Below, piece after piece: positions 42,666 to 51,408 of a stretch of 64,000 nucleotides of DNA. Numbering within the stretch: position 1 is the first letter of the stretch; each line of letters opens with the position of its first letter. The notes beneath the pieces are model-generated. The model was given only the letters and a program-made list of their open reading frames with translations, ran no database searches and had not been told where the DNA came from. A program made the translations under genes and the position numbers. The stretch is from positions 1 to 64,000 of IMG/VR virus record IMGVR_UViG_3300027710_000011; one strand, 5' to 3'.

Positions 42666-42690
42666 GTGATATGTAACTGAAACAAATTAG
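42666..42690 (-). promoter_or_regulatory. early-type phage promoter motif
   Basis: Minus strand CTAA-N12-ACATATCAC upstream of the RNAP-subunit operon; resembles the phiKZ early TATATTAC consensus. Confidence 0.68.
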
Positions 42691-42756: not shown

Positions 42757-42795
42757 TGTTCACCCAAGCAAGCCCGAAGGCTTGTGCTGGATTAC

Positions 42796-44949
42796 TTAGA
42801 TGACGTGATTGTGGATCGCGACCTTCTTGTCGATCACATCTTCCCAGCCCTTGATCGTGATCACGGCCATGATAGGCATGTTCGTGATGTGACGGAAGGC
42901 CGGTTGCACGGTCAGTTCCTTGCTGTTCGCACCGTTGCGGTGGATCGGCAGAGCCAACACCAGCTCAGGCTGATAAGCCATGTTGCCGAAGTTCAGCACG
43001 TTCGGGACGCCTTCCGAAGCATTGGGAGCCTTCAGAGTCATCACGATCTTGCCGTTCATCAGCTTGTTGGGAGTGGAAACCACTTCCAACGACATGCCTT
43101 CACCCAGAGTGCGCATGTCGCCAGTGACCATCAGCCAGCCTTCGGTCACTTGGTCGGTACCGGCCAAGACGATCGGGTCCACGTCGTTGCCGCCGTTCAG
43201 AGCAGCAGCGGCTTGACGCCAGCCGGAGTCACGCACCATGCGATACGACATTTCGCGCATCTTGTTGGTGATGGCTTGCTGGATGTCTTCAGCCAGGTTG
43301 TGCGACTGGATGTTGTTGACGATGGTGCCCAGATCCAGCTCGAACTCTTCGTAGAACGGAGTGATCAAGTGACGCGACACGCCCAGGATGTCCAGGGTAT
43401 CGCCGATCAGGCCTTGCGAACCAACGTAGCGGCTCAGCACGTCCTTGACGCGCAGCAGCTCGTCCACGGCGCCGTTGCTGGCGCGGATGCGAGTGGTGGT
43501 GATCAGAGCGTTCAGGTCGCTGGTGTCGGTGTCATCGCCTTGGCCCAGAGGACGGGGAGCGGTGATAGGCGACAGCAGAGGCACCGAGTAGCACTGGTTG
43601 TACACCGTGATGTCCAGCAGGTCGCCACGCTGACGACGGTTGCTGTTGGTACGACGAGCGTCGATGTTGTAGCCGATCAGCTTGGCGTCGACGAAGGCAG
43701 CGAAGATGGCCTGGATGCCAGCCGGATTGGACGCACCGGGAACGTACTTCACGCCGTTCTGGGTCACCGAAGTCACGGTCACTTCACCAGCCAACAGATT
43801 CATGGTGCCGGTCTGCAGATCCAGCGAACCCGAAACCATGAAGCCCAGACGCACTTCCACGCCGGGAACCACGCCAGCCAGTTCGCCCGGCTTGGCGCCG
43901 TCGATAGCCAGGGTGCTCGAAGTCACCATCACCGACTTGTTTTCGAAGTTCAGGGTGACGCGCTTTTCCGAACCTTGCGGGTTGTAGACGAAGTTCGAAG
44001 TGAACAGGTCCTTGGTCGGGAAGTAGATCACGTCGCCAGTTGCGTCCTTCAGTTGCAAGTAGGCGCCGGCCAGGTGCACGTCACGGTCCACAGCGTCGGT
44101 CGAGTCCATCAGGCCAGATTGCACCAGCGAGTCGACTTGCGACAGGCCGATCAGGCTCATCTGCTGGCCGAACTTCAGAGCGCCGGTGACCACGGCTTCG
44201 CCGTTCTGGTCCACGGTGCTGTGCGGGATGATGGCGCTGTCGACGAACTTGTTGGCAGCTTCGTTGCGGAACACCGGGATGATCGTGGTCTGGTTGTTGC
44301 GCAGGATGTCGGGATCGCGCAGAGCGAACACGATGTTGCGACGCTTGAAGTCGTTCACGTCGCCGGAGGTGGCGCGACGCACTTCGTCCATGACGCTGAT
44401 CAGTTGGATCGAGATCAAGTAGCCGACCTGGTCACGAGTCACCACCACGGTGGGGTAGAAGGCTTCGCCGAACTTGTCTTGCTGAGCCGCTTGCATGTTG
44501 TACGTCACTGTGTACGCAGACATGTTGCGGTTCGATGCGTCGTCGTAGGCTTCCATGGCGGTAGCCAGGCGCTCGACGCCGCCAGCAGCAGCGATCATCA
44601 CGTTGTTGCCATCTTGCGGCAGGCTCGGAGCCTTGCCACCCAGGTAGCTCTTGCCAGCTTGAGCGATCATGGCGGCGCCCAGAGCGGCGTCACGACGAGC
44701 GGGAGTCAGCTTGCCCAGGCCGGAGTCGTTGGCGTAGCCTTCCAGAGCAACACGCAGACGATCCAAGCCGCCGCCGAAGGACTCTTGTTCGGAGTCGTTC
44801 ATGCTTTCCAGAGCGATGCCGGAGCGCACGCCAGCGATCAACGAGGTGCCGCCGTTGGACTGCGCTTCGTTCTTGACAGCGTTCAGGAGACCAGACAGAC
44901 CAGTAGCCGGGATGCGACCAGCCAGGAGACGTTGAACTGCATTTTTCAT
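42796..44949 (-). CDS. major capsid protein (phiKZ gp120-like)
   Basis: YNMQAAQQDKFGEAFYPTV, ARRTNSNRRQRG and KELTVQP motifs; propeptide with ALE/ALE/AME sites; strong codon bias. Start placed at ATG 44949. Confidence 0.88.
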   Translation of the reverse strand: MKNAVQRLLAGRIPATGLSGLLNAVKNEAQSNGGTSLIAGVRSGIALESMNDSEQESFGGGLDRLRVALEGYANDSGLGKLTPARRDAALGAAMIAQAGKSYLGGKAPSLPQDGNNVMIAAAGGVERLATAMEAYDDASNRNMSAYTVTYNMQAAQQDKFGEAFYPTVVVTRDQVGYLISIQLISVMDEVRRATSGDVNDFKRRNIVFALRDPDILRNNQTTIIPVFRNEAANKFVDSAIIPHSTVDQNGEAVVTGALKFGQQMSLIGLSQVDSLVQSGLMDSTDAVDRDVHLAGAYLQLKDATGDVIYFPTKDLFTSNFVYNPQGSEKRVTLNFENKSVMVTSSTLAIDGAKPGELAGVVPGVEVRLGFMVSGSLDLQTGTMNLLAGEVTVTSVTQNGVKYVPGASNPAGIQAIFAAFVDAKLIGYNIDARRTNSNRRQRGDLLDITVYNQCYSVPLLSPITAPRPLGQGDDTDTSDLNALITTTRIRASNGAVDELLRVKDVLSRYVGSQGLIGDTLDILGVSRHLITPFYEEFELDLGTIVNNIQSHNLAEDIQQAITNKMREMSYRMVRDSGWRQAAAALNGGNDVDPIVLAGTDQVTEGWLMVTGDMRTLGEGMSLEVVSTPNKLMNGKIVMTLKAPNASEGVPNVLNFGNMAYQPELVLALPIHRNGANSKELTVQPAFRHITNMPIMAVITIKGWEDVIDKKVAIHNHVI

Positions 44950-44999
44950 GATTTGGTTTTCCGTAGAAGAAAGAGAAAAGAATGACAATCGGAATTGGT

Positions 45000-45738: not shown

Positions 45739-47280
45739 ATGGACAAAAAAATACTTCTCATTAAGGGTGTTACGCTGTTGTTTCGTGAGAGTCAAATTCC
45801 GAACAACGCTGACAACTCAGCGGCGCTGGTTAAAACACTCTTGGAGGGCGTAACGCTCCCAGACGTAAGTGTTGGTGCCATTGACACCGAACGAGAGATC
45901 CTAGGGGCTCTCAAGCAGATTTGTCTTGAGATGTGTGGACAATCGCCTACACATCAATACGTTGCAGTTGAACTGCTACAAAAGATTCACCACGCCACAC
46001 GGCATGACGAAACTCTATACCATACGTTTCGTGAAGGTATCGAAACTCAGTTGTCAGAAGATGAGCTCAAACGCTTTTGTCTGAATCTGGAAGCTGACGT
46101 TAACGAACATGTCCGTGAAGAAAAGATCAGTAAGCTGATTCTTGATGCAGGAATGCAGCTCAAGTTCAAGCGCGATACCGTTGGCAATATGCAAAGCTTT
46201 GCTGCCGACATCGTTCAAAAGCTTGAGCCTTATAGCGTCAGTGCAAGTAAGGAAGATCCTGGTGTTGTTGGTACGGTTGACTTCGGCAACCGTGAACAGA
46301 TGAACCAGATGATCGAAGAGGGTAAGACCCTGAACAGTTCTGAAGGTATTCTTCGTTTGGGTTGGCAAGGTGTCAACCGAATGACTGAAGGTGGTCTGCG
46401 CCGCGGCGAGTTCGTCACAGTGGCGGCCTTGCAACATAACTTCAAGACCGGTTTCTCTATAAATCTGTTCGAGCATATTGCGATGTATAACACACCGCAC
46501 ATGATCAACGTAATGAAGCGTCCGTTGTTGCTTCGGATCACGTTTGAAGATCCGTTGTCTACCAACATGACTTACATGTATCGCAACATCTACGAGAACA
46601 AAACTCGTCAGATGGCCGACGTGATGGGTACACCGACTGCGGAAATGACAGAGTACGTTTATAACGCTCTGACTGCAACGGGTTATGAGATCATGATGAT
46701 GCACGTTAATCCGTCCGAGTGGACGTATCGACACATCACAAACAAGGTCTTGGAACTTGAAGCCCAGGGCTATGAGATCCATGTTCTGGCATTGGACTAT
46801 CTGGCCATGGTTCCTACAACAGGTTGCCGTGTGACCGGTCCTACTGGTTCAGACATCCGAGATATGTTCCGTCGTATGCGTAACTTCTGTGGTCCTCGCA
46901 AGATCACCTGCATCACGCCTCACCAGTTGTCGACTGAAGCCAAGAAGTTGACACGGATGGGTAACGAAGAGAACTTCGTCAAGGACGTGGCTAACAAGGG
47001 TTACTACGATAGCTGTTCTACCATTGACCAAGAGATCGATCTGGAACTCTACATCCACATCGTGAAGGCCGATGGTGCATCCTACTTGACAGTACAGCGC
47101 GGTAAGCACCGTGGCTTCAACCGTACGCCTGAAGCTCACAAGTTCTGCGTGTTGAAGTTTGAAGACGTTGGCGACATCATCCATGACGTTGACGGTGTTG
47201 ATCTGACTCGCAAGCGTCCAGGCGGTGGGCCAATGGGTAGTCCGGATGAGAAACCTCATTGGGACTTTTCCATCGATTAA
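45739..47280 (+). CDS. dnaB: DnaB-like replicative helicase (phiKZ gp118-like)
   Basis: GLRRGE...ALQHNFKTG (variant Walker A), ITFED, LDYL, TPHQLS and QRGKHR. Confidence 0.88.
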   Translation: MDKKILLIKGVTLLFRESQIPNNADNSAALVKTLLEGVTLPDVSVGAIDTEREILGALKQICLEMCGQSPTHQYVAVELLQKIHHATRHDETLYHTFREGIETQLSEDELKRFCLNLEADVNEHVREEKISKLILDAGMQLKFKRDTVGNMQSFAADIVQKLEPYSVSASKEDPGVVGTVDFGNREQMNQMIEEGKTLNSSEGILRLGWQGVNRMTEGGLRRGEFVTVAALQHNFKTGFSINLFEHIAMYNTPHMINVMKRPLLLRITFEDPLSTNMTYMYRNIYENKTRQMADVMGTPTAEMTEYVYNALTATGYEIMMMHVNPSEWTYRHITNKVLELEAQGYEIHVLALDYLAMVPTTGCRVTGPTGSDIRDMFRRMRNFCGPRKITCITPHQLSTEAKKLTRMGNEENFVKDVANKGYYDSCSTIDQEIDLELYIHIVKADGASYLTVQRGKHRGFNRTPEAHKFCVLKFEDVGDIIHDVDGVDLTRKRPGGGPMGSPDEKPHWDFSID

Positions 47281-47283
47281 TGC

Positions 47284-47476
47284 AAAAAAAAAAAGAGGTG
47301 ATCAACAGGTCGGCGCATCGGGACACCCCGATGCGCTAGGAGCACCCGCTCCTTGACATGTTGATCACCTAAAAGACCTCTTGAGCAAAAACTCGTCGAG
47401 GGCTGAGGGAGGAGGGAGTCAGCAGCAACCAAACTACTGAACCCCAGAGACAGGACAACCAATCCTATCTCACCTT
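47284..47476 (-). ncRNA. putative ~190-nt structured small RNA
   Basis: Has its own promoter motif at 47478-47502, two hairpins with UUGGUU loops, a CU-rich tract, a three-way junction and a U11 tail; no credible ORF. Confidence 0.65.
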
Positions 47477-47477
47477 A

Positions 47478-47502
47478 GTCATATGTAACCAAAATAATCT
47501 TC
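47478..47502 (-). promoter_or_regulatory. early-type promoter motif driving the small RNA
   Basis: Minus strand GAAG-N12-ACATATGAC. Confidence 0.58.
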
Positions 47503-47513
47503 ATTGTACGAAA

Positions 47514-48218
47514 ATGGGCACTTCACAATCTATCGAAGTTACAGCTGCGATGAAAAGTCCACGGAAGTCTCGCACTGAGCAAGAGATCATCAAGATTTTT
47601 GATTCTGAGTTGCAGTTGTTCAATCATAGCCGGAACATTGTGAAGGCCAGTCGTATTGGTTCTAAGAATCAAAGCGTCTGTGAAGATGTTCGTGAGCTGA
47701 AGATGGATTTCTTGATTAAAGAGATCAAGAAAGTCATTGGACCGATTGGTAAGCTCAGTGGCGAACGACGAGCGGCTGCCGAAGTGATGGCGTGTGAAAG
47801 CTATTACTTGATTCTGGAAGGGTTGACGCAACTCCATCCAAGCGAGCAGTACGTCAAGAACCTAATGCTCAAGGCATGGGAAGCTGTTCGAGACAACAAG
47901 GGCATTGGTTACTTCAGTCCATTCAACAAGACGGAAGAAGCGCTGTACTGGCTGTATCGTTTCGTGCATGACGGTAACATCCGTTTTAGCAAGTTCCATT
48001 CACACGTTCAAGCTCACTTCGCTCTTGTTGAGTATCGTCTGCGTAACGGCTGCTTGATTAACAAGTACGATCCGAAGTGGACAAAGCTTCAGGAGGATTC
48101 CAGGGTCGTCCACAAATGGGCGGGTAAAGATGGAATGAATCTCAACCCTGAAGCGTATCGTTTCAAGATTGCCGACCTGCACCGAGAAATTACGGGTCGG
48201 CTACATTCAGGCATGTAA
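47514..48218 (+). CDS. hypothetical protein (234 aa)
   Basis: ORF track; no recognisable motif. Confidence 0.65.
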   Translation: MGTSQSIEVTAAMKSPRKSRTEQEIIKIFDSELQLFNHSRNIVKASRIGSKNQSVCEDVRELKMDFLIKEIKKVIGPIGKLSGERRAAAEVMACESYYLILEGLTQLHPSEQYVKNLMLKAWEAVRDNKGIGYFSPFNKTEEALYWLYRFVHDGNIRFSKFHSHVQAHFALVEYRLRNGCLINKYDPKWTKLQEDSRVVHKWAGKDGMNLNPEAYRFKIADLHREITGRLHSGM

Positions 48219-48230
48219 AAAGGATTTCAC

Positions 48231-48920
48231 ATGTTTAAAGATTTACAACCTCAGCCTAACCAATCCCACTTGGCTTGGCTGCTCCCGTTCCAAAAGGCCC
48301 AGGAGATCCATGATCGCCTGTACTGCCGCGATGTGGCATGTATGGCACCCACAGACCGTGCTGTGTTTCTGACAATGTTGCTAGCCAAGTACATTAGCAA
48401 CATTCAAGCAGACATGTACACGTCCAATAACGGCATCACTACTGGCAAGCGTGTCACTGACATCTTGATCACCACAACCTCTTTGCTGACTGCATTGGGC
48501 GTGAGCATTCAAGAGCGTTTGGAAAAACTCAACGTTCCTTCACACGTGAATGGTGAGCAGGCCCTGATGCAATGGTTGAGCAACAACTACGTTTTTGACA
48601 TGGGTCCTACCACGGCTTCTGTCAGCGATGTTTACGATCGCAATATGCAGTACATGGTGGCAATGCCTGTTCAGCTCTACAAGGCTATTGACGCGGCTGA
48701 AAACACCAAGCTGATGCAGACGGCAAGTAACTCTCGCTCAGTACTTGTGAACGCCGCCATGCACTTATGGGTTCAGGCTGTGATCTCTCATACACGCCAT
48801 CGCCATACGTCGTTCATTTACGACATGACGGAACGATTGCATGAAGTGGAGTTGAAGTCAATTCACTCCCAATCATTCGGTCTGTTCCCGAATTACTCGT
48901 TGGACAGTTTGTACCGGTGA
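48231..48920 (+). CDS. hypothetical protein, possibly all-alpha NTP pyrophosphohydrolase-like
   Basis: AAGGA SD. The Q..HDRLY...LAKY...VTDILI helical pattern is only a weak resemblance. Confidence 0.55.
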   Translation: MFKDLQPQPNQSHLAWLLPFQKAQEIHDRLYCRDVACMAPTDRAVFLTMLLAKYISNIQADMYTSNNGITTGKRVTDILITTTSLLTALGVSIQERLEKLNVPSHVNGEQALMQWLSNNYVFDMGPTTASVSDVYDRNMQYMVAMPVQLYKAIDAAENTKLMQTASNSRSVLVNAAMHLWVQAVISHTRHRHTSFIYDMTERLHEVELKSIHSQSFGLFPNYSLDSLYR

Positions 48921-49033: not shown

Positions 49034-50209
49034 TTACTTGTTCAGCTTGTCCAGGATCAGGACGAGAGTCTTGGTGAGACTCTTGTTCGTTTCCAGGAGT
49101 TCAGCGTTAACCTTGCGGGTTTCACGAACTTCACGTTGCACAGCTTGGTTGAAACTGTGAACGGTTTCCAATTTCTGGTGGAGTTCGCGATTGTCAACGA
49201 CAAGTGCTTCGATCATTTCAGTCAGGTGATCAACACGACCTTCGTTGTGATCACCTTGGCTTTCGATCTCTTGCAACTGACGCTGAGTGTCACGATTTCC
49301 GACCGCGATCGCATCCAACACTTGCGAGTGAAGGCTGTATGCGTTATCACGCGGCGCACGGTCATGGTTAGTGCCGTACTGATTGGTAGGCTTTTCGGCC
49401 TTGTTCTTCTTTACTTCTTTTTCTTTGACCTCAACCTTAGGTTTGGTCTTGGTCTTGGTTTCAGGCTGAGGTTCGGGCACCACGTCGTAAACAAGCGGAC
49501 CGCCAATGTCGGCCAGCTTGAGAACCAACTCAGCACTCATCTGTCCAACCAGACGATACTTCATCACCGCCTTTTCGCCTTCGATCTGATACGAGATAGA
49601 GATCAGCCCACTGACAATGGGGCCGGTCGCTTTCTTCGCATTCGTGATCAAACGGCTGCCGACAGAGATGTAACGCAGGCCCTTGGTCAGGAGCGTTGTC
49701 ACATCGCCAACTTGTGCGATGTAGTCGCGCAGTTTGGCCAAGTTCTTCATATCGCCTTCATCGCGAATCGCAGTATTGTCACCGACGGAGTCAAGAACGG
49801 TGAGGAATTCGTGCGTTTCTTCGGCGAGCAGCTCGATCACTGCTTTGGTTTCTTCGACACCGATAGGGGAACCGGAAGTGAAGTTGCCGTGTTTATGAAG
49901 CCAGTCGCTGCCTTCATTAGCGATGTAGAACTCATAGGTGTCATCGTTATTTGCACGACGATTGACAACAAGGTTCAAGCTTTCATGAGACGTAAAAGCT
50001 TTGTGGGTCGGATTGGTGGGTGCCTGAGATTCGGGTTGCTCAATCACCGGGTCGGCAGCGTCAGCGACCGCGTCGTCGCTGTTGCTTGCTTGCTGGGTGG
50101 ATGCATCAGCGACAGCTTCGGCTGGAGGCGCAATGAGTTCCGGGGTAGGAACTTGTTGTGCTTCAGCTTCGATGACAGCAGCTGCGCTTTGAGTGTTCAG
50201 ATCGTACAT
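49034..50209 (-). CDS. hypothetical protein (acidic disordered N-terminus, Lys-rich linker, C-terminal coiled coil)
   Basis: GGAG SD; 391-aa ORF. Confidence 0.75.
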   Translation of the reverse strand: MYDLNTQSAAAVIEAEAQQVPTPELIAPPAEAVADASTQQASNSDDAVADAADPVIEQPESQAPTNPTHKAFTSHESLNLVVNRRANNDDTYEFYIANEGSDWLHKHGNFTSGSPIGVEETKAVIELLAEETHEFLTVLDSVGDNTAIRDEGDMKNLAKLRDYIAQVGDVTTLLTKGLRYISVGSRLITNAKKATGPIVSGLISISYQIEGEKAVMKYRLVGQMSAELVLKLADIGGPLVYDVVPEPQPETKTKTKPKVEVKEKEVKKNKAEKPTNQYGTNHDRAPRDNAYSLHSQVLDAIAVGNRDTQRQLQEIESQGDHNEGRVDHLTEMIEALVVDNRELHQKLETVHSFNQAVQREVRETRKVNAELLETNKSLTKTLVLILDKLNK

Positions 50210-50430
50210 TCTAGTGACTCCGTTAAAATCGTATTTGTTGTTCTATTACAAATACGTCTTGTTTACCAAAGCTCGTGGGTTGTTCACAAACTTTGATCCC
50301 CTTTTTACGTGCGAATACTTACTACTGTATCTGACGTAATTCTCTTTACATTGCCTTTCGCATACTTTTTTGAGCACGCTCAGACATAGGACTTTACAAG
50401 CTGGTATTTTTTACCATCTTTCAAGGGACA

Positions 50431-51380
50431 GCATAAGGGGAGTAGGAGGCGCCCAGCCTCCTACTCCCGATAGCCGGGTCATCGCTGACCCTAAGTGTGG
50501 GTGAGCTAGGGTGGTCAACCAAAAAACCACCGTAACTCACGCCCCTTCCACACTCCTCACAATGCTGTCTGCTCCGACATTTCTATCAGGCACTGGGTCA
50601 GCTCCCCAGCTCATTGTAAGATCAGATTCGCCGAACCTGACTTTCGCTCTTGTTGAGGCTACTCCAGAACTCACCTCAGTTTAATGCTCCGCCATCTGGA
50701 TTGAGCATTTTTCTCTTACCGTATTGCGTGTACGAACCGAACAAACTCCTACAATACAATACGTGAGAAAACGGCGCACCAATGACTTCAGCGAGTCTAG
50801 TGCGCCTTCATTGAAGACGTATACTGGGGGTAGCCCAGCACACGTCGTCAACGTATGAACAGCATAGACAACGAACACTCAACTCCCCGAAAGGAGTCGA
50901 GCATTCGCTTCTATACTGTTTAATGATAATCCTAGGTCACCATCCAAGTCGCCAAGCCGTTGCGTACAGCCTGGTTTGAGCGCCCTCCACAAGAGCCAGT
51001 GTTGCTGGCAATCATGCTTTCAGGTGACTAAGGGCTATCATCGTCTAGTCCTCCGCGCTTCACAGATCTTGGGATTGTTAAGCCCGCTTTCGGGGGCGCC
51101 CTTAATCTCCACGCGATGGCGCTATCTTTCAGATAACTTGCTAGTTAAGATGTCACCTTAACTAACCTGATGCGGCATGGGTTGACAACCCACCCTAGAG
51201 CCAACTTTCGTCGGCCCCATTCAACTATCATGTGTTTACGCTTTCGCGCTATGATAGTGCCTAAGGCATCACTCTTGGCCACTGATGAATTACTCCAAGC
51301 CGGAGCCTATTCCATCAGGTGATCTTCTTCACACGATCGTCTTGCACGTAAAAACTTGCATTACAACCAGCGATTCCACG
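50431..51380 (-). ncRNA. putative ~950-nt highly structured large non-coding RNA
   Basis: Largest gene-free gap in the window. It has a promoter motif at 51384-51408, a terminator at 50432-50468, and more than 15 helices with GAAA/GCGA/UUCG loops and G-U pairs that form only on the minus strand. Confidence 0.8.
50432..50468 (-). terminator. terminator of the large ncRNA
   Basis: Minus strand GGGAGTAGGAGGC-TGGGC-GCCTCCTACTCCC-CTTATGC; same hairpin+TTATG type as the other terminators. Confidence 0.75.
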
Positions 51381-51383
51381 TTT

Positions 51384-51408
51384 GTGATATGTGGCTGTGC
51401 AAATCTAG
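51384..51408 (-). promoter_or_regulatory. early-type promoter motif driving the large ncRNA
   Basis: Minus strand CTAG-N12-ACATATCAC; the core is identical to the 42666 and 62835 copies. Confidence 0.7.

What the first reader, a model, noticed from the sequence alone, without database searches (positions are those of the whole stretch)
47284..47502. Second stand-alone RNA gene (~190 nt) with repeated UUGGUU loops and an anti-SD-like tract
Seen: a promoter-motif copy (ACATATGAC, 47478-47486) points into an ORF-less stretch convergent with dnaB. The transcript would read GAGAUAGGA-[UUGGUUG]-UCCUGUCUC, then UCAGUAGU-[UUGGUU]-GCUGCUGA (both with G-U pairs valid only on this strand). These are followed by CUCCCUCCUCCCUC, a weaker hairpin, a three-way junction and U11. 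Established: repeated loop motifs are the design of protein-titrating sRNAs such as CsrB and RsmZ, although those use GGA loops; CCUCC tracts are how several sRNAs occlude ribosome-binding sites. Inference: an early phage sRNA acting as a protein decoy, a translational repressor, or both.
Basis: partly seen in the sequence, partly recalled or inferred. Interest (0 to 1): 0.75.

Follow-up and report, generated by a model that had tools for sequence, protein, structure and literature searches.

The report
New early small RNA of jumbo phages
The flagged stretch is a real gene for a folded RNA of about 185 nt that makes no protein, lies behind the same early promoter type as the phage-nucleus shell gene, and is conserved with compensating base changes in ten related uncultivated giant phages; its job is still unknown.

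Summary
Every listed feature is at the stated coordinates on the minus strand, between dnaB and an orphan 234-aa gene. The window is the first 64 kb of a 276,772-bp metagenomic jumbo phage that encodes chimallin.

The RNA is a new family. A covariance model finds full-length homologues in 10 distinct contigs. It finds none in 57 more distant DnaB loci or five whole relative genomes, and Rfam has no match. In the consensus structure 95.8% of cells pair, 38 of 50 pairs show double changes, and G·U outnumbers A·C 65 to 9, which fixes the strand.

The promoter motif belongs to a class of 24 sites, all on the minus strand, that also precede chimallin, a tubulin-like gene (weak Pfam match) and an RNA polymerase beta-like gene. 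By analogy with phiKZ this is the early class. The hairpin plus U11 design also ends six minus-strand protein genes.

Three unpaired elements are conserved: two loops with UGGUUG and a linker with CCUCCC. A neighbouring ~1.1-kb ORF-less RNA carries the same loop motif.

No RNA-seq run could be listed, so expression and function are inferred. My best guess is a trans-acting early regulator. The CsrB-like decoy idea is untested.

The parts
47478..47513 (-). Early-type phage promoter: T-rich upstream part plus core (tt)aCATATGAC at 47478-47486
   Evidence: PWM score 35.9. It is one of 24 genome-wide sites, all on the minus strand. The motif and its spacing to hairpin 1 are conserved in all 10 homologues. 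The same class precedes chimallin, an RNAP beta-like gene and a gene with a weak Tubulin/FtsZ match.
47286..47473 (-). Predicted transcript, about 185 nt. The 5' end is inferred near 47471-47473 and the 3' end lies in the U run.
   Evidence: Covariance-model match at 47286-47475, 216.6 bits. The start site is inferred from the rule that early motifs centre near -10 (PMC7598289) and from where conservation begins. It has not been mapped.
47447..47471 (-). P1 hairpin, 9 bp, with 7-nt loop UUGGUUG (47456-47462)
   Evidence: 100% of cells paired in 10 sequences, and 2 pairs have double changes. Loop positions UGGUU are invariant.
47414..47445 (-). P2 hairpin: outer GGGG/UCCC, inner 8 bp, loop UUGGUU(G) at 47426-47432
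   Evidence: Every homologue forms it when folded alone. All 4 modelled inner pairs show double changes. GGUUG is present in the loop of all 10.
47405..47418 (-). CU tract CUCCCUCCUCCCUC; the part at 47405-47413 is unpaired
   Evidence: CCUCCC is invariant in 10 of 10 and lies in a single-stranded linker in every individual fold.
47374..47404 (-). P3 hairpin, variable in sequence
   Evidence: The two helices have 5 and 3 pairs, and 7 of these 8 pairs show double changes.
47296..47370 (-). Three-way junction: P4 basal stem (47359-47370 with 47296-47307), P5 (47339-47352), P6 (47313-47336, conserved apex GGGUGUCC)
   Evidence: P4 has 16 modelled pairs, 15 with double changes. P6 has 10 pairs, 8 with double changes.
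47284..47294 (-). U11 tail, which together with P4 forms an intrinsic terminator
   Evidence: It is the longest of the eight structure-preceded intergenic T runs listed for the genome. Six of those eight follow the end of a minus-strand gene within 38-64 nt, chimallin among them. On the + strand the same hairpin is followed by UAAAAGACC, with no U run.

Best explanation
The stretch is a stand-alone gene for a structured non-coding RNA of about 185 nt. It founds a new RNA family confined to one clade of uncultivated, chimallin-encoding jumbo phages.

Shown:
- a conserved promoter, fold and terminator, all on the minus strand;
- covariation in every helix;
- no conserved reading frame;
- three conserved unpaired elements: two loops with UGGUUG and a linker with CCUCCC.

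Inferred by analogy: the injected virion RNA polymerase transcribes it at the very start of infection, together with chimallin.

Inferred and weakest: the RNA acts in trans through the exposed elements. It would pair with the A/C-rich CAACCA(A) element found in the leaders of a subset of phage (and perhaps host) mRNAs, and with G-rich ribosome-binding sites, and so tune translation early in infection.

I put the gene-level claim at about 0.85-0.9. The figure below is for the whole statement, mechanism included.
For: Anatomy and energy.

Family:
- Model R1 finds 10 distinct full-length homologues at 84-217 bits.
- Each folds alone into the same P1-P2-linker-P3-junction-U-run design.
- 95.8% of cells pair, against 36-46% when partners are slid. 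38 of 50 pairs have double changes. 0 of 500 shuffles reach the observed values.

Strand: 65 G·U against 9 A·C cells. That is 95.8% paired on the minus strand and 84.5% if read on the plus strand.

Promoter:
- It is conserved at fixed spacing in all 10 homologues.
- It belongs to a class of 24 sites, all on the minus strand.
- The class precedes chimallin, an RNAP beta-like gene and a gene with a weak Tubulin/FtsZ match.
- Literature on early promoters and chmA.

Terminator logic.

Conservation relative to neighbours: the flanking protein orf234 is only 27% identical between the window and L006, while P1 is identical apart from one loop base. The RNA also survives flank rearrangements: an extra gene, a homing-endonuclease insertion, and no orf234 homologue called at the L087 locus.

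Target lead:
- CAACCAA, the exact complement of the loop, is the commonest A/C-only 7-mer in the 60 nt upstream of genes. It occurs upstream of 13 of 262 genes in sense and 0 in antisense; composition-matched 7-mers average 2.7.
- CAACCA occurs 21 times in sense against 1 in antisense.
- It lies within 150 nt downstream of 9 of the 24 early promoters, against 8.5% of random windows.
Against: - No transcript evidence: no RNA run could be listed.
- The host is unknown, so host targets cannot be examined.
- Predicted pairing of the CU tract with the phage's own start regions is not enriched.
- The order loops-then-CU-tract on the RNA is the reverse of what one continuous duplex with CAACCA...GGAG would need.
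- I noticed the link between CAACCA and the loops after the fact. It concerns about 8% of genes, and A/C-rich leaders may exist for unrelated reasons.
- Gene starts came from my own crude caller.
Confidence: 0.45

Rival explanations
1. Protein sponge or scaffold. The UGGUUG loops, and perhaps the CCUCCC tract, are binding sites for a phage or host RNA-binding protein. The 185-nt RNA and the neighbouring 1.1-kb RNA would titrate, deliver or assemble that protein early in infection.
For: The same loop motif sits on three covarying hairpins in two ORF-less regions behind early-type promoters, and on no other intergenic minus-strand hairpin with a stem of 6 bp or more in the genome. The loop core is invariant while the stems vary. 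Repeated loop motifs are the design of CsrB/RsmZ-type sponges (established knowledge).
Against: There are only two sites per RNA. No candidate protein was identified: the neighbours orf234 and orf229 show no RNA-binding signature. No GGA or other known protein-binding motif sits in the loops.
Confidence: 0.25
2. Cis-antisense regulator. The gene lies on the opposite strand inside a plus-strand operon (dnaB/gene X - orf234 - orf229). Read-through plus-strand mRNA would carry its exact complement, with CAACCAA in mirror-image loops. Kissing-loop pairing would then give a duplex of about 185 bp that is cleaved, or that blocks expression of the downstream genes.
For: In all eight homologous loci where both flanks are seen, the RNA sits between a convergent plus-strand gene and the start of a divergent plus-strand gene, despite flank rearrangements; in L085 only the divergent gene is on the contig. 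The terminator works in one direction only, so plus-strand transcription should pass through. All 24 early promoters are on the minus strand, so the plus-strand operon must be driven otherwise and probably later. Stable stem-loops with 6-7-nt loops are typical of antisense RNAs such as CopA and RNA I (established knowledge).
Against: A pure antisense role does not explain strict conservation of particular loop and linker sequences, since any sequence is complementary to its own opposite strand. It also does not explain the same loop motif in the 1.1-kb RNA. No plus-strand promoter or read-through has been shown.
Confidence: 0.15
3. Passive insulator. The promoter plus strong terminator is kept only to manage transcription or replication conflicts at the junction of opposed gene blocks, and the RNA product has no role.
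For: It lies at a strand-switch junction and carries the longest T run listed for the genome.
Against: A terminator needs one hairpin. Here five helices covary and three unpaired sequence elements are invariant across 10 homologues. The RNA is far better conserved than the adjacent protein gene.
Confidence: 0.07
4. Plus-strand element: a structured 3' UTR of dnaB or 5' leader of orf234, with the two CAACCAA copies serving as leader elements.
For: The plus strand also folds well (-87.7 kcal/mol, z = -9.75). It carries CAACCAA 51 and 81 nt before the orf234 start codon.
Against: 65 G·U pairs would become A·C mismatches on the plus strand. The conserved promoter and the U run point the other way. 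When the downstream plus-strand gene differs (L087, L085) the element is unchanged.
Confidence: 0.03

Closest known systems
Small intergenic and 5'-UTR-derived RNAs of phiKZ and 201phi2-1, mapped by ONT-cappable-seq (PMC10914365, PMC11512511)
   Same: Both are short transcripts of about 70-250 nt in phiKZ-like jumbo phages, bounded by a phage promoter and a nearby terminator, with unknown function. In both cases some are conserved by position among related phages.
   Different: There is no sequence or structure homology. Models R1 and R2 find nothing outside the narrow clade. Those RNAs have transcript evidence but little covariation evidence; this one has the reverse.
CsrB / RsmZ / RsmY protein-titrating sRNAs
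   Same: A repeated short motif is displayed in hairpin loops, and the RNA ends in an intrinsic terminator.
   Different: The motif here is UGGUUG, not (A)GGA, and there are two copies rather than about 5-22. No Rfam match. No CsrA-type partner is implied.
sRNAs with C-rich seeds that mask ribosome-binding sites (RsaE/RoxS, loops of RNAIII; established knowledge)
   Same: An unpaired, invariant C/U-rich tract (CCUCCC) is complementary to G-rich Shine-Dalgarno sequences.
   Different: The tract lies in a linker rather than a loop. No enrichment of predicted pairing with the phage's own start regions was found. Host targets cannot be tested.
Kissing-loop antisense RNAs (CopA/CopT, RNA I/RNA II)
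   Same: It is encoded opposite a transcribed region and has stable stems with 6-7-nt recognition loops.
   Different: It overlaps an intergenic spacer, not a leader or start codon. An overlapping transcript has not been shown.

Membership tests
Any Rfam 15 family | Covariance-model score at or above the family's gathering threshold | tested here: not met
   No match at gathering level in the whole window. At E<=10 on 47200-47600 there are only two chance snoRNA hits of 13-14 bits, against thresholds of 36-41.
CsrB/RsmZ-type protein sponge | Many GGA motifs exposed in hairpin loops | tested here: not met
   The conserved loops read UUGGUUG and UUGGUU. The one GGA in P1 lies inside the stem.
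CsrB/RsmZ-type protein sponge | Binds and titrates a CsrA/RsmA-family protein | not testable with these tools
   The host is unknown and no binding data exist.
Stand-alone bacterial or phage sRNA gene | Own promoter directly upstream, in the orientation of the RNA | tested here: met
   PWM 35.9, within a class of 24 sites. The motif is conserved at fixed spacing in 10 of 10 homologues.
Stand-alone bacterial or phage sRNA gene | Intrinsic terminator: a stem followed at once by a U run on the same strand | tested here: met
   The P4 stem is followed by U11. U runs of 6-11 occur in all homologues. The same design follows six minus-strand protein genes.
Stand-alone bacterial or phage sRNA gene | No conserved reading frame | tested here: met
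   Stop-free stretches differ in frame and length among homologues. No ATG-started frame is shared.
Stand-alone bacterial or phage sRNA gene | A discrete transcript of the predicted size | not testable with these tools
   None of the listed runs is RNA; the four that hold the sequence are DNA metagenomes.
Early (virion RNA polymerase) promoter class of phiKZ-like phages | Highly conserved AT-rich motif of about 10 nt near -10 that can be found by sequence alone upstream of early operons, chmA and the non-virion RNAP genes among them | tested here: met
   The motif (TTTCAGnn)aCATATCAC lies upstream of chimallin, an RNAP beta-like gene, a gene with a weak Tubulin/FtsZ match and clusters of small genes. 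The criterion comes from PMC7598289 and PMC12908238. Timing itself was not measured.
Cis-antisense RNA | An overlapping transcript from the opposite strand | not testable with these tools
   There is no plus-strand terminator signal between dnaB and orf234, but no RNA data exist.

The most novel reading that the evidence does not exclude
The UGGUUG hairpin loops shared by this 185-nt RNA and the neighbouring 1.1-kb RNA define an RNA-based early-infection device of chimalliviruses. In this reading the exposed UGGU units capture single-stranded ACCA/CAACCA sequences, either the A/C-rich leaders of mRNAs or the 3'-NCCA ends of tRNAs, much as the T-box UGGN bulge and the GGU of the RNase P L15 loop pair with tRNA 3' ends (recalled from memory, not tested). 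The adjacent CCUCCC tract would imitate the anti-Shine-Dalgarno tail of 16S rRNA. Together they would reprogramme or route translation substrates as soon as the phage genome enters the cell.
Probability: 0.08. Interest if true: 0.85.

Novelty: new member of a known kind. Interest (0 to 1): 0.6.

Why it matters
Nucleus-forming jumbo phages separate transcription from translation. They must control what happens to their first transcripts, yet almost nothing is known about non-coding RNAs in their early programme.

This RNA has unusually strong comparative support for a metagenomic phage element. It carries the same promoter type as the nucleus shell gene. It also shares a loop motif with a much larger structured RNA next door.

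If it is expressed as predicted, it gives a defined and mutable handle on early post-transcriptional control in this phage family: two loops and one linker. It could also be added to RNA family databases to improve annotation of giant-phage genomes.

Tried and rejected
- Rfam at gathering level and at permissive thresholds gave nothing. ARAGORN found no tRNA or tmRNA in the window.
- blastn of the element against 50,697 phage records gave no match.
- There is no second copy in the phage's own genome.
- Exact and degenerate P1 patterns found nothing in IMG/VR.
- A 20-mer pattern in JGI metagenomes returned the phage's own contig plus three hits. On reading, these were chance matches in unrelated sequence, and I rejected them.
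- Models R1 and R2 found no homologue near DnaB in 57 more distant jumbo phages, or anywhere in five whole relative genomes, including Ralstonia phage RP12.
- Small-protein reading: rejected.
- Leader or attenuator of a downstream minus-strand gene: rejected. In eight of the ten loci the sequence downstream is antisense to a convergent gene or holds no called gene (it runs off the contig in L085). In L069 the downstream gene is an HNH/NUMOD homing endonuclease with its own promoter.
- CAACCA as a promoter element: rejected, because no flanking conservation was found.
- Global anti-SD action on phage genes: no enrichment.
- RNA-seq evidence: none could be listed. Laying DNA contigs showed close and diverged relatives in sediment and drinking-water metagenomes, but the substitution table was cut off before the RNA region.
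- The contig of the 80%-identical DnaB relative P0003 could not be fetched.
- Function of the neighbours: orf234 has no lead. orf229 has only a weak MazG/dUTPase-like lead from Atlas features.

Full report
**Where we are.** The window is the first 64 kb of a single 276,772-bp virus record from a metagenome. It encodes a phiKZ-type major capsid protein (42796-44988, minus strand) and a divergent DnaB-like helicase (45739-47280, plus strand). Elsewhere in the genome it encodes chimallin, an RNA polymerase beta-like subunit and a gene with a weak, sub-threshold Tubulin/FtsZ match. It is therefore an uncultivated chimallin-encoding, and so presumably nucleus-forming, jumbo phage. The nearest named relatives are Ralstonia phages RP12 and RP31, with DnaB 53% identical. 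The finding occupies the 233-nt spacer between dnaB and an orphan 234-aa plus-strand gene, orf234 (47514-48218). A second orphan plus-strand gene, orf229 (48231-48920), follows it.

**Observation.** These are the ACATATGAC core (47478-47486), P1 (47447-47471, loop UUGGUUG), P2 (47414-47445, loop UUGGUU), the tract CUCCCUCCUCCCUC (47405-47418), a weaker hairpin P3, a three-way junction (47296-47370) and U11 (47284-47294). The run ends 3 nt from the dnaB stop codon. The predicted fold has -94.8 kcal/mol and z = -7.25. The opposite strand also folds well, so energy alone does not settle the strand.

**A conserved family.** DnaB and orf229 homologues from the large protein collection led to metagenomic contigs of close relatives.
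- A covariance model built from the window and one relative finds full-length matches of 84-217 bits in ten distinct contigs.
- Each of the ten folds on its own into the same design: P1, P2, unpaired CU linker, P3, three-way junction, U run.
- On the consensus structure 95.8% of cells are standard pairs, against 36-46% when partners are slid by 1-3 columns.
- 38 of 50 pairs carry changes on both sides, and none of 500 shuffles reaches the observed values.
- No reading frame is shared.
- Neither this model nor a second one built from all ten sequences finds a convincing match next to DnaB in 57 more distant jumbo phages, or anywhere in five whole relative genomes including RP12.
- Rfam has no match and the phage's own genome has no second copy.

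**Strand and boundaries.** Three independent lines agree on the minus strand.
- There are 65 G·U cells against 9 A·C cells. This gives 95.8% pairing as read and 84.5% if read on the plus strand.
- The promoter motif is conserved in all ten, at fixed spacing from P1.
- The U run follows the basal stem only on the minus strand. Of the eight structure-preceded intergenic T runs (T>=7) in this genome, six follow the end of a minus-strand gene within 38-64 nt, chimallin among them. U11 is the longest of the eight.

**Promoter class.** The bare 9-mer is not over-represented. The extended motif, T-rich/TTTCAG-nn-aCATATCAC, defines 24 sites, all on the minus strand. They precede chimallin, an RNA polymerase beta-like gene, the tubulin-like gene and clusters of small genes. 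In phiKZ-like phages the one motif that can be found from sequence alone is the early, virion-polymerase promoter centred near -10 (PMC7598289). That polymerase transcribes chmA and the non-virion polymerase genes first (PMC12908238). By analogy the RNA is an early transcript starting at or next to the first base of P1. This is inference: no RNA run could be listed.

**Context.** The RNA is much better conserved than its neighbour. Between the window and L006, orf234 is 27% identical, while P1 is identical apart from one loop base. It also persists through rearrangements.
- Most relatives have an extra 175-215-aa plus-strand gene between dnaB and the RNA.
- One near relative has an HNH/NUMOD homing endonuclease, with its own early-type promoter, inserted just after the terminator.
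- In two relatives (L087, L085) the RNA sits directly before the orf229 homologue. In L087 no orf234 homologue is called between them; the L085 contig begins only about 40 nt before the RNA.
- The group with 59%-identical DnaB has unrelated genes there and no RNA.

**What might it do?** The sequence-constrained unpaired parts are the two loops (UGGUU invariant in P1, GGUUG in P2) and CCUCCC in the linker. I followed two leads.

First lead: the loop motif recurs.
- The 1.1-kb ORF-less region at about 50235-51383, also behind an early-type promoter and conserved in relatives, contains a covarying hairpin whose loop carries UUGGUUGA.
- These three are the only intergenic minus-strand hairpins with stems of 6 bp or more that carry TGGTTG in the loop, anywhere in the genome.

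Second lead: the loop complement is a leader motif.
- CAACCAA is the commonest A/C-only 7-mer in the 60 nt upstream of genes: 13 of 262 in sense and 0 in antisense, with composition-matched 7-mers averaging 2.7.
- CAACCA occurs 21 times in sense against 1 in antisense.
- It lies downstream of 9 of the 24 early promoters, against 8.5% of random windows.
- It has no flanking conservation that would make it a promoter.

In contrast, pairing of the CU tract with the phage's own start regions is not enriched.

I therefore favour a trans-acting early RNA that recognises RNA through its loops and linker. A protein-sponge role is close behind it, a cis-antisense role is a real alternative, and a passive insulator or a plus-strand element is unlikely. 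My gene calls are crude, and I noticed the leader link after the fact, so this is a lead and not a result.

**Comparison with known systems.** Small promoter-to-terminator RNAs of unknown function are already documented in phiKZ and 201phi2-1. This is a new, unrelated family of that kind. It fails the defining feature of CsrB/RsmZ sponges, which is GGA loops. Its resemblance to sRNAs with C-rich anti-SD seeds and to kissing-loop antisense RNAs is architectural only.

**Verdict.** The RNA gene is real and well supported. Its early timing is plausible by analogy. Its function is open. It is a new member of a known kind, and its interest is raised by the strength of the covariation, the link to the chimallin promoter class and the loop motif shared with a large neighbouring RNA.

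Noticed in passing
window 50235-51392, minus strand: An ORF-less, highly structured region of about 1.1 kb lies directly behind an early-type promoter (ccaCATATCAC, 51384-51392). It ends in a hairpin plus UUUU just before the ribosome-binding site of the 391-aa coiled-coil gene (49034-50209). It is conserved in four relatives, with long invariant blocks between variable hairpins. Rfam has no match even at E<=1. One covarying hairpin (about 50505-50530) shows the same UUGGUUG(A) loop as the 185-nt RNA.
   Followed up: partly
whole genome G000; in the window at 42673, 47485, 51391, 54787, 58295 and 62842 (minus strand): A promoter class, T-rich/TTTCAG-nn-aCATATCAC, has 24 sites, all on the minus strand. 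The sites precede chimallin (199686-201734), an RNAP beta-like gene (184236-186383), a gene with a weak Tubulin/FtsZ match (210290-211291) and clusters of small genes. It is most likely the early, virion-polymerase class.
   Followed up: yes
60 nt upstream of about 8% of genes, e.g. window 62822 and 59531 (minus strand): The A/C-rich element CAACCA(A) is enriched in mRNA leaders on the sense strand (21 sense against 1 antisense; about 3 times denser than in coding sequence). It lies 10-36 nt before start codons or in the spacer between the ribosome-binding site and ATG. No flanking conservation was found.
   Followed up: partly
L069:1-2700 (relative with a 276,853-bp contig): In this near relative the gene calls show dnaB in pieces: a 473-aa ORF with a weak HNH_3 hit, then a 131-aa divDNAB fragment. 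A 331-aa HNH/NUMOD homing endonuclease with its own early-type promoter sits on the minus strand right after the RNA terminator. The last codons of the window's dnaB remain as a remnant.
   Followed up: partly
window 42784-44985 (+) against 42796-44988 (-): A 733-aa open frame on the plus strand mirrors the major capsid gene on the minus strand almost end to end. Only the minus-strand frame matches PhiKZ_MCP, so long shadow ORFs occur in this genome.
   Followed up: yes
G000 about 107380-107700, minus strand: A structured segment followed by a T7 run (107420) has no same-strand gene end within 200 nt. It lies just upstream of another early-type promoter (107380). It may be a further small RNA or a long 3' UTR.
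   Followed up: no
window 47295-47339, in run X2 record 5: A diverged relative in a sediment metagenome has 68 other letters in place of 43 nt of the junction domain. Drinking-water metagenome contigs carry near-identical copies of the RNA's 5' half. The table of substitutions for the RNA region was cut off.
   Followed up: no
window 48231-48920 (+): orf229, the gene after orf234, resembles all-alpha MazG/dUTPase_2-like nucleotide pyrophosphohydrolases, by Atlas language-model features only (scores 0.88-0.92). There is no Pfam hit.
   Followed up: partly
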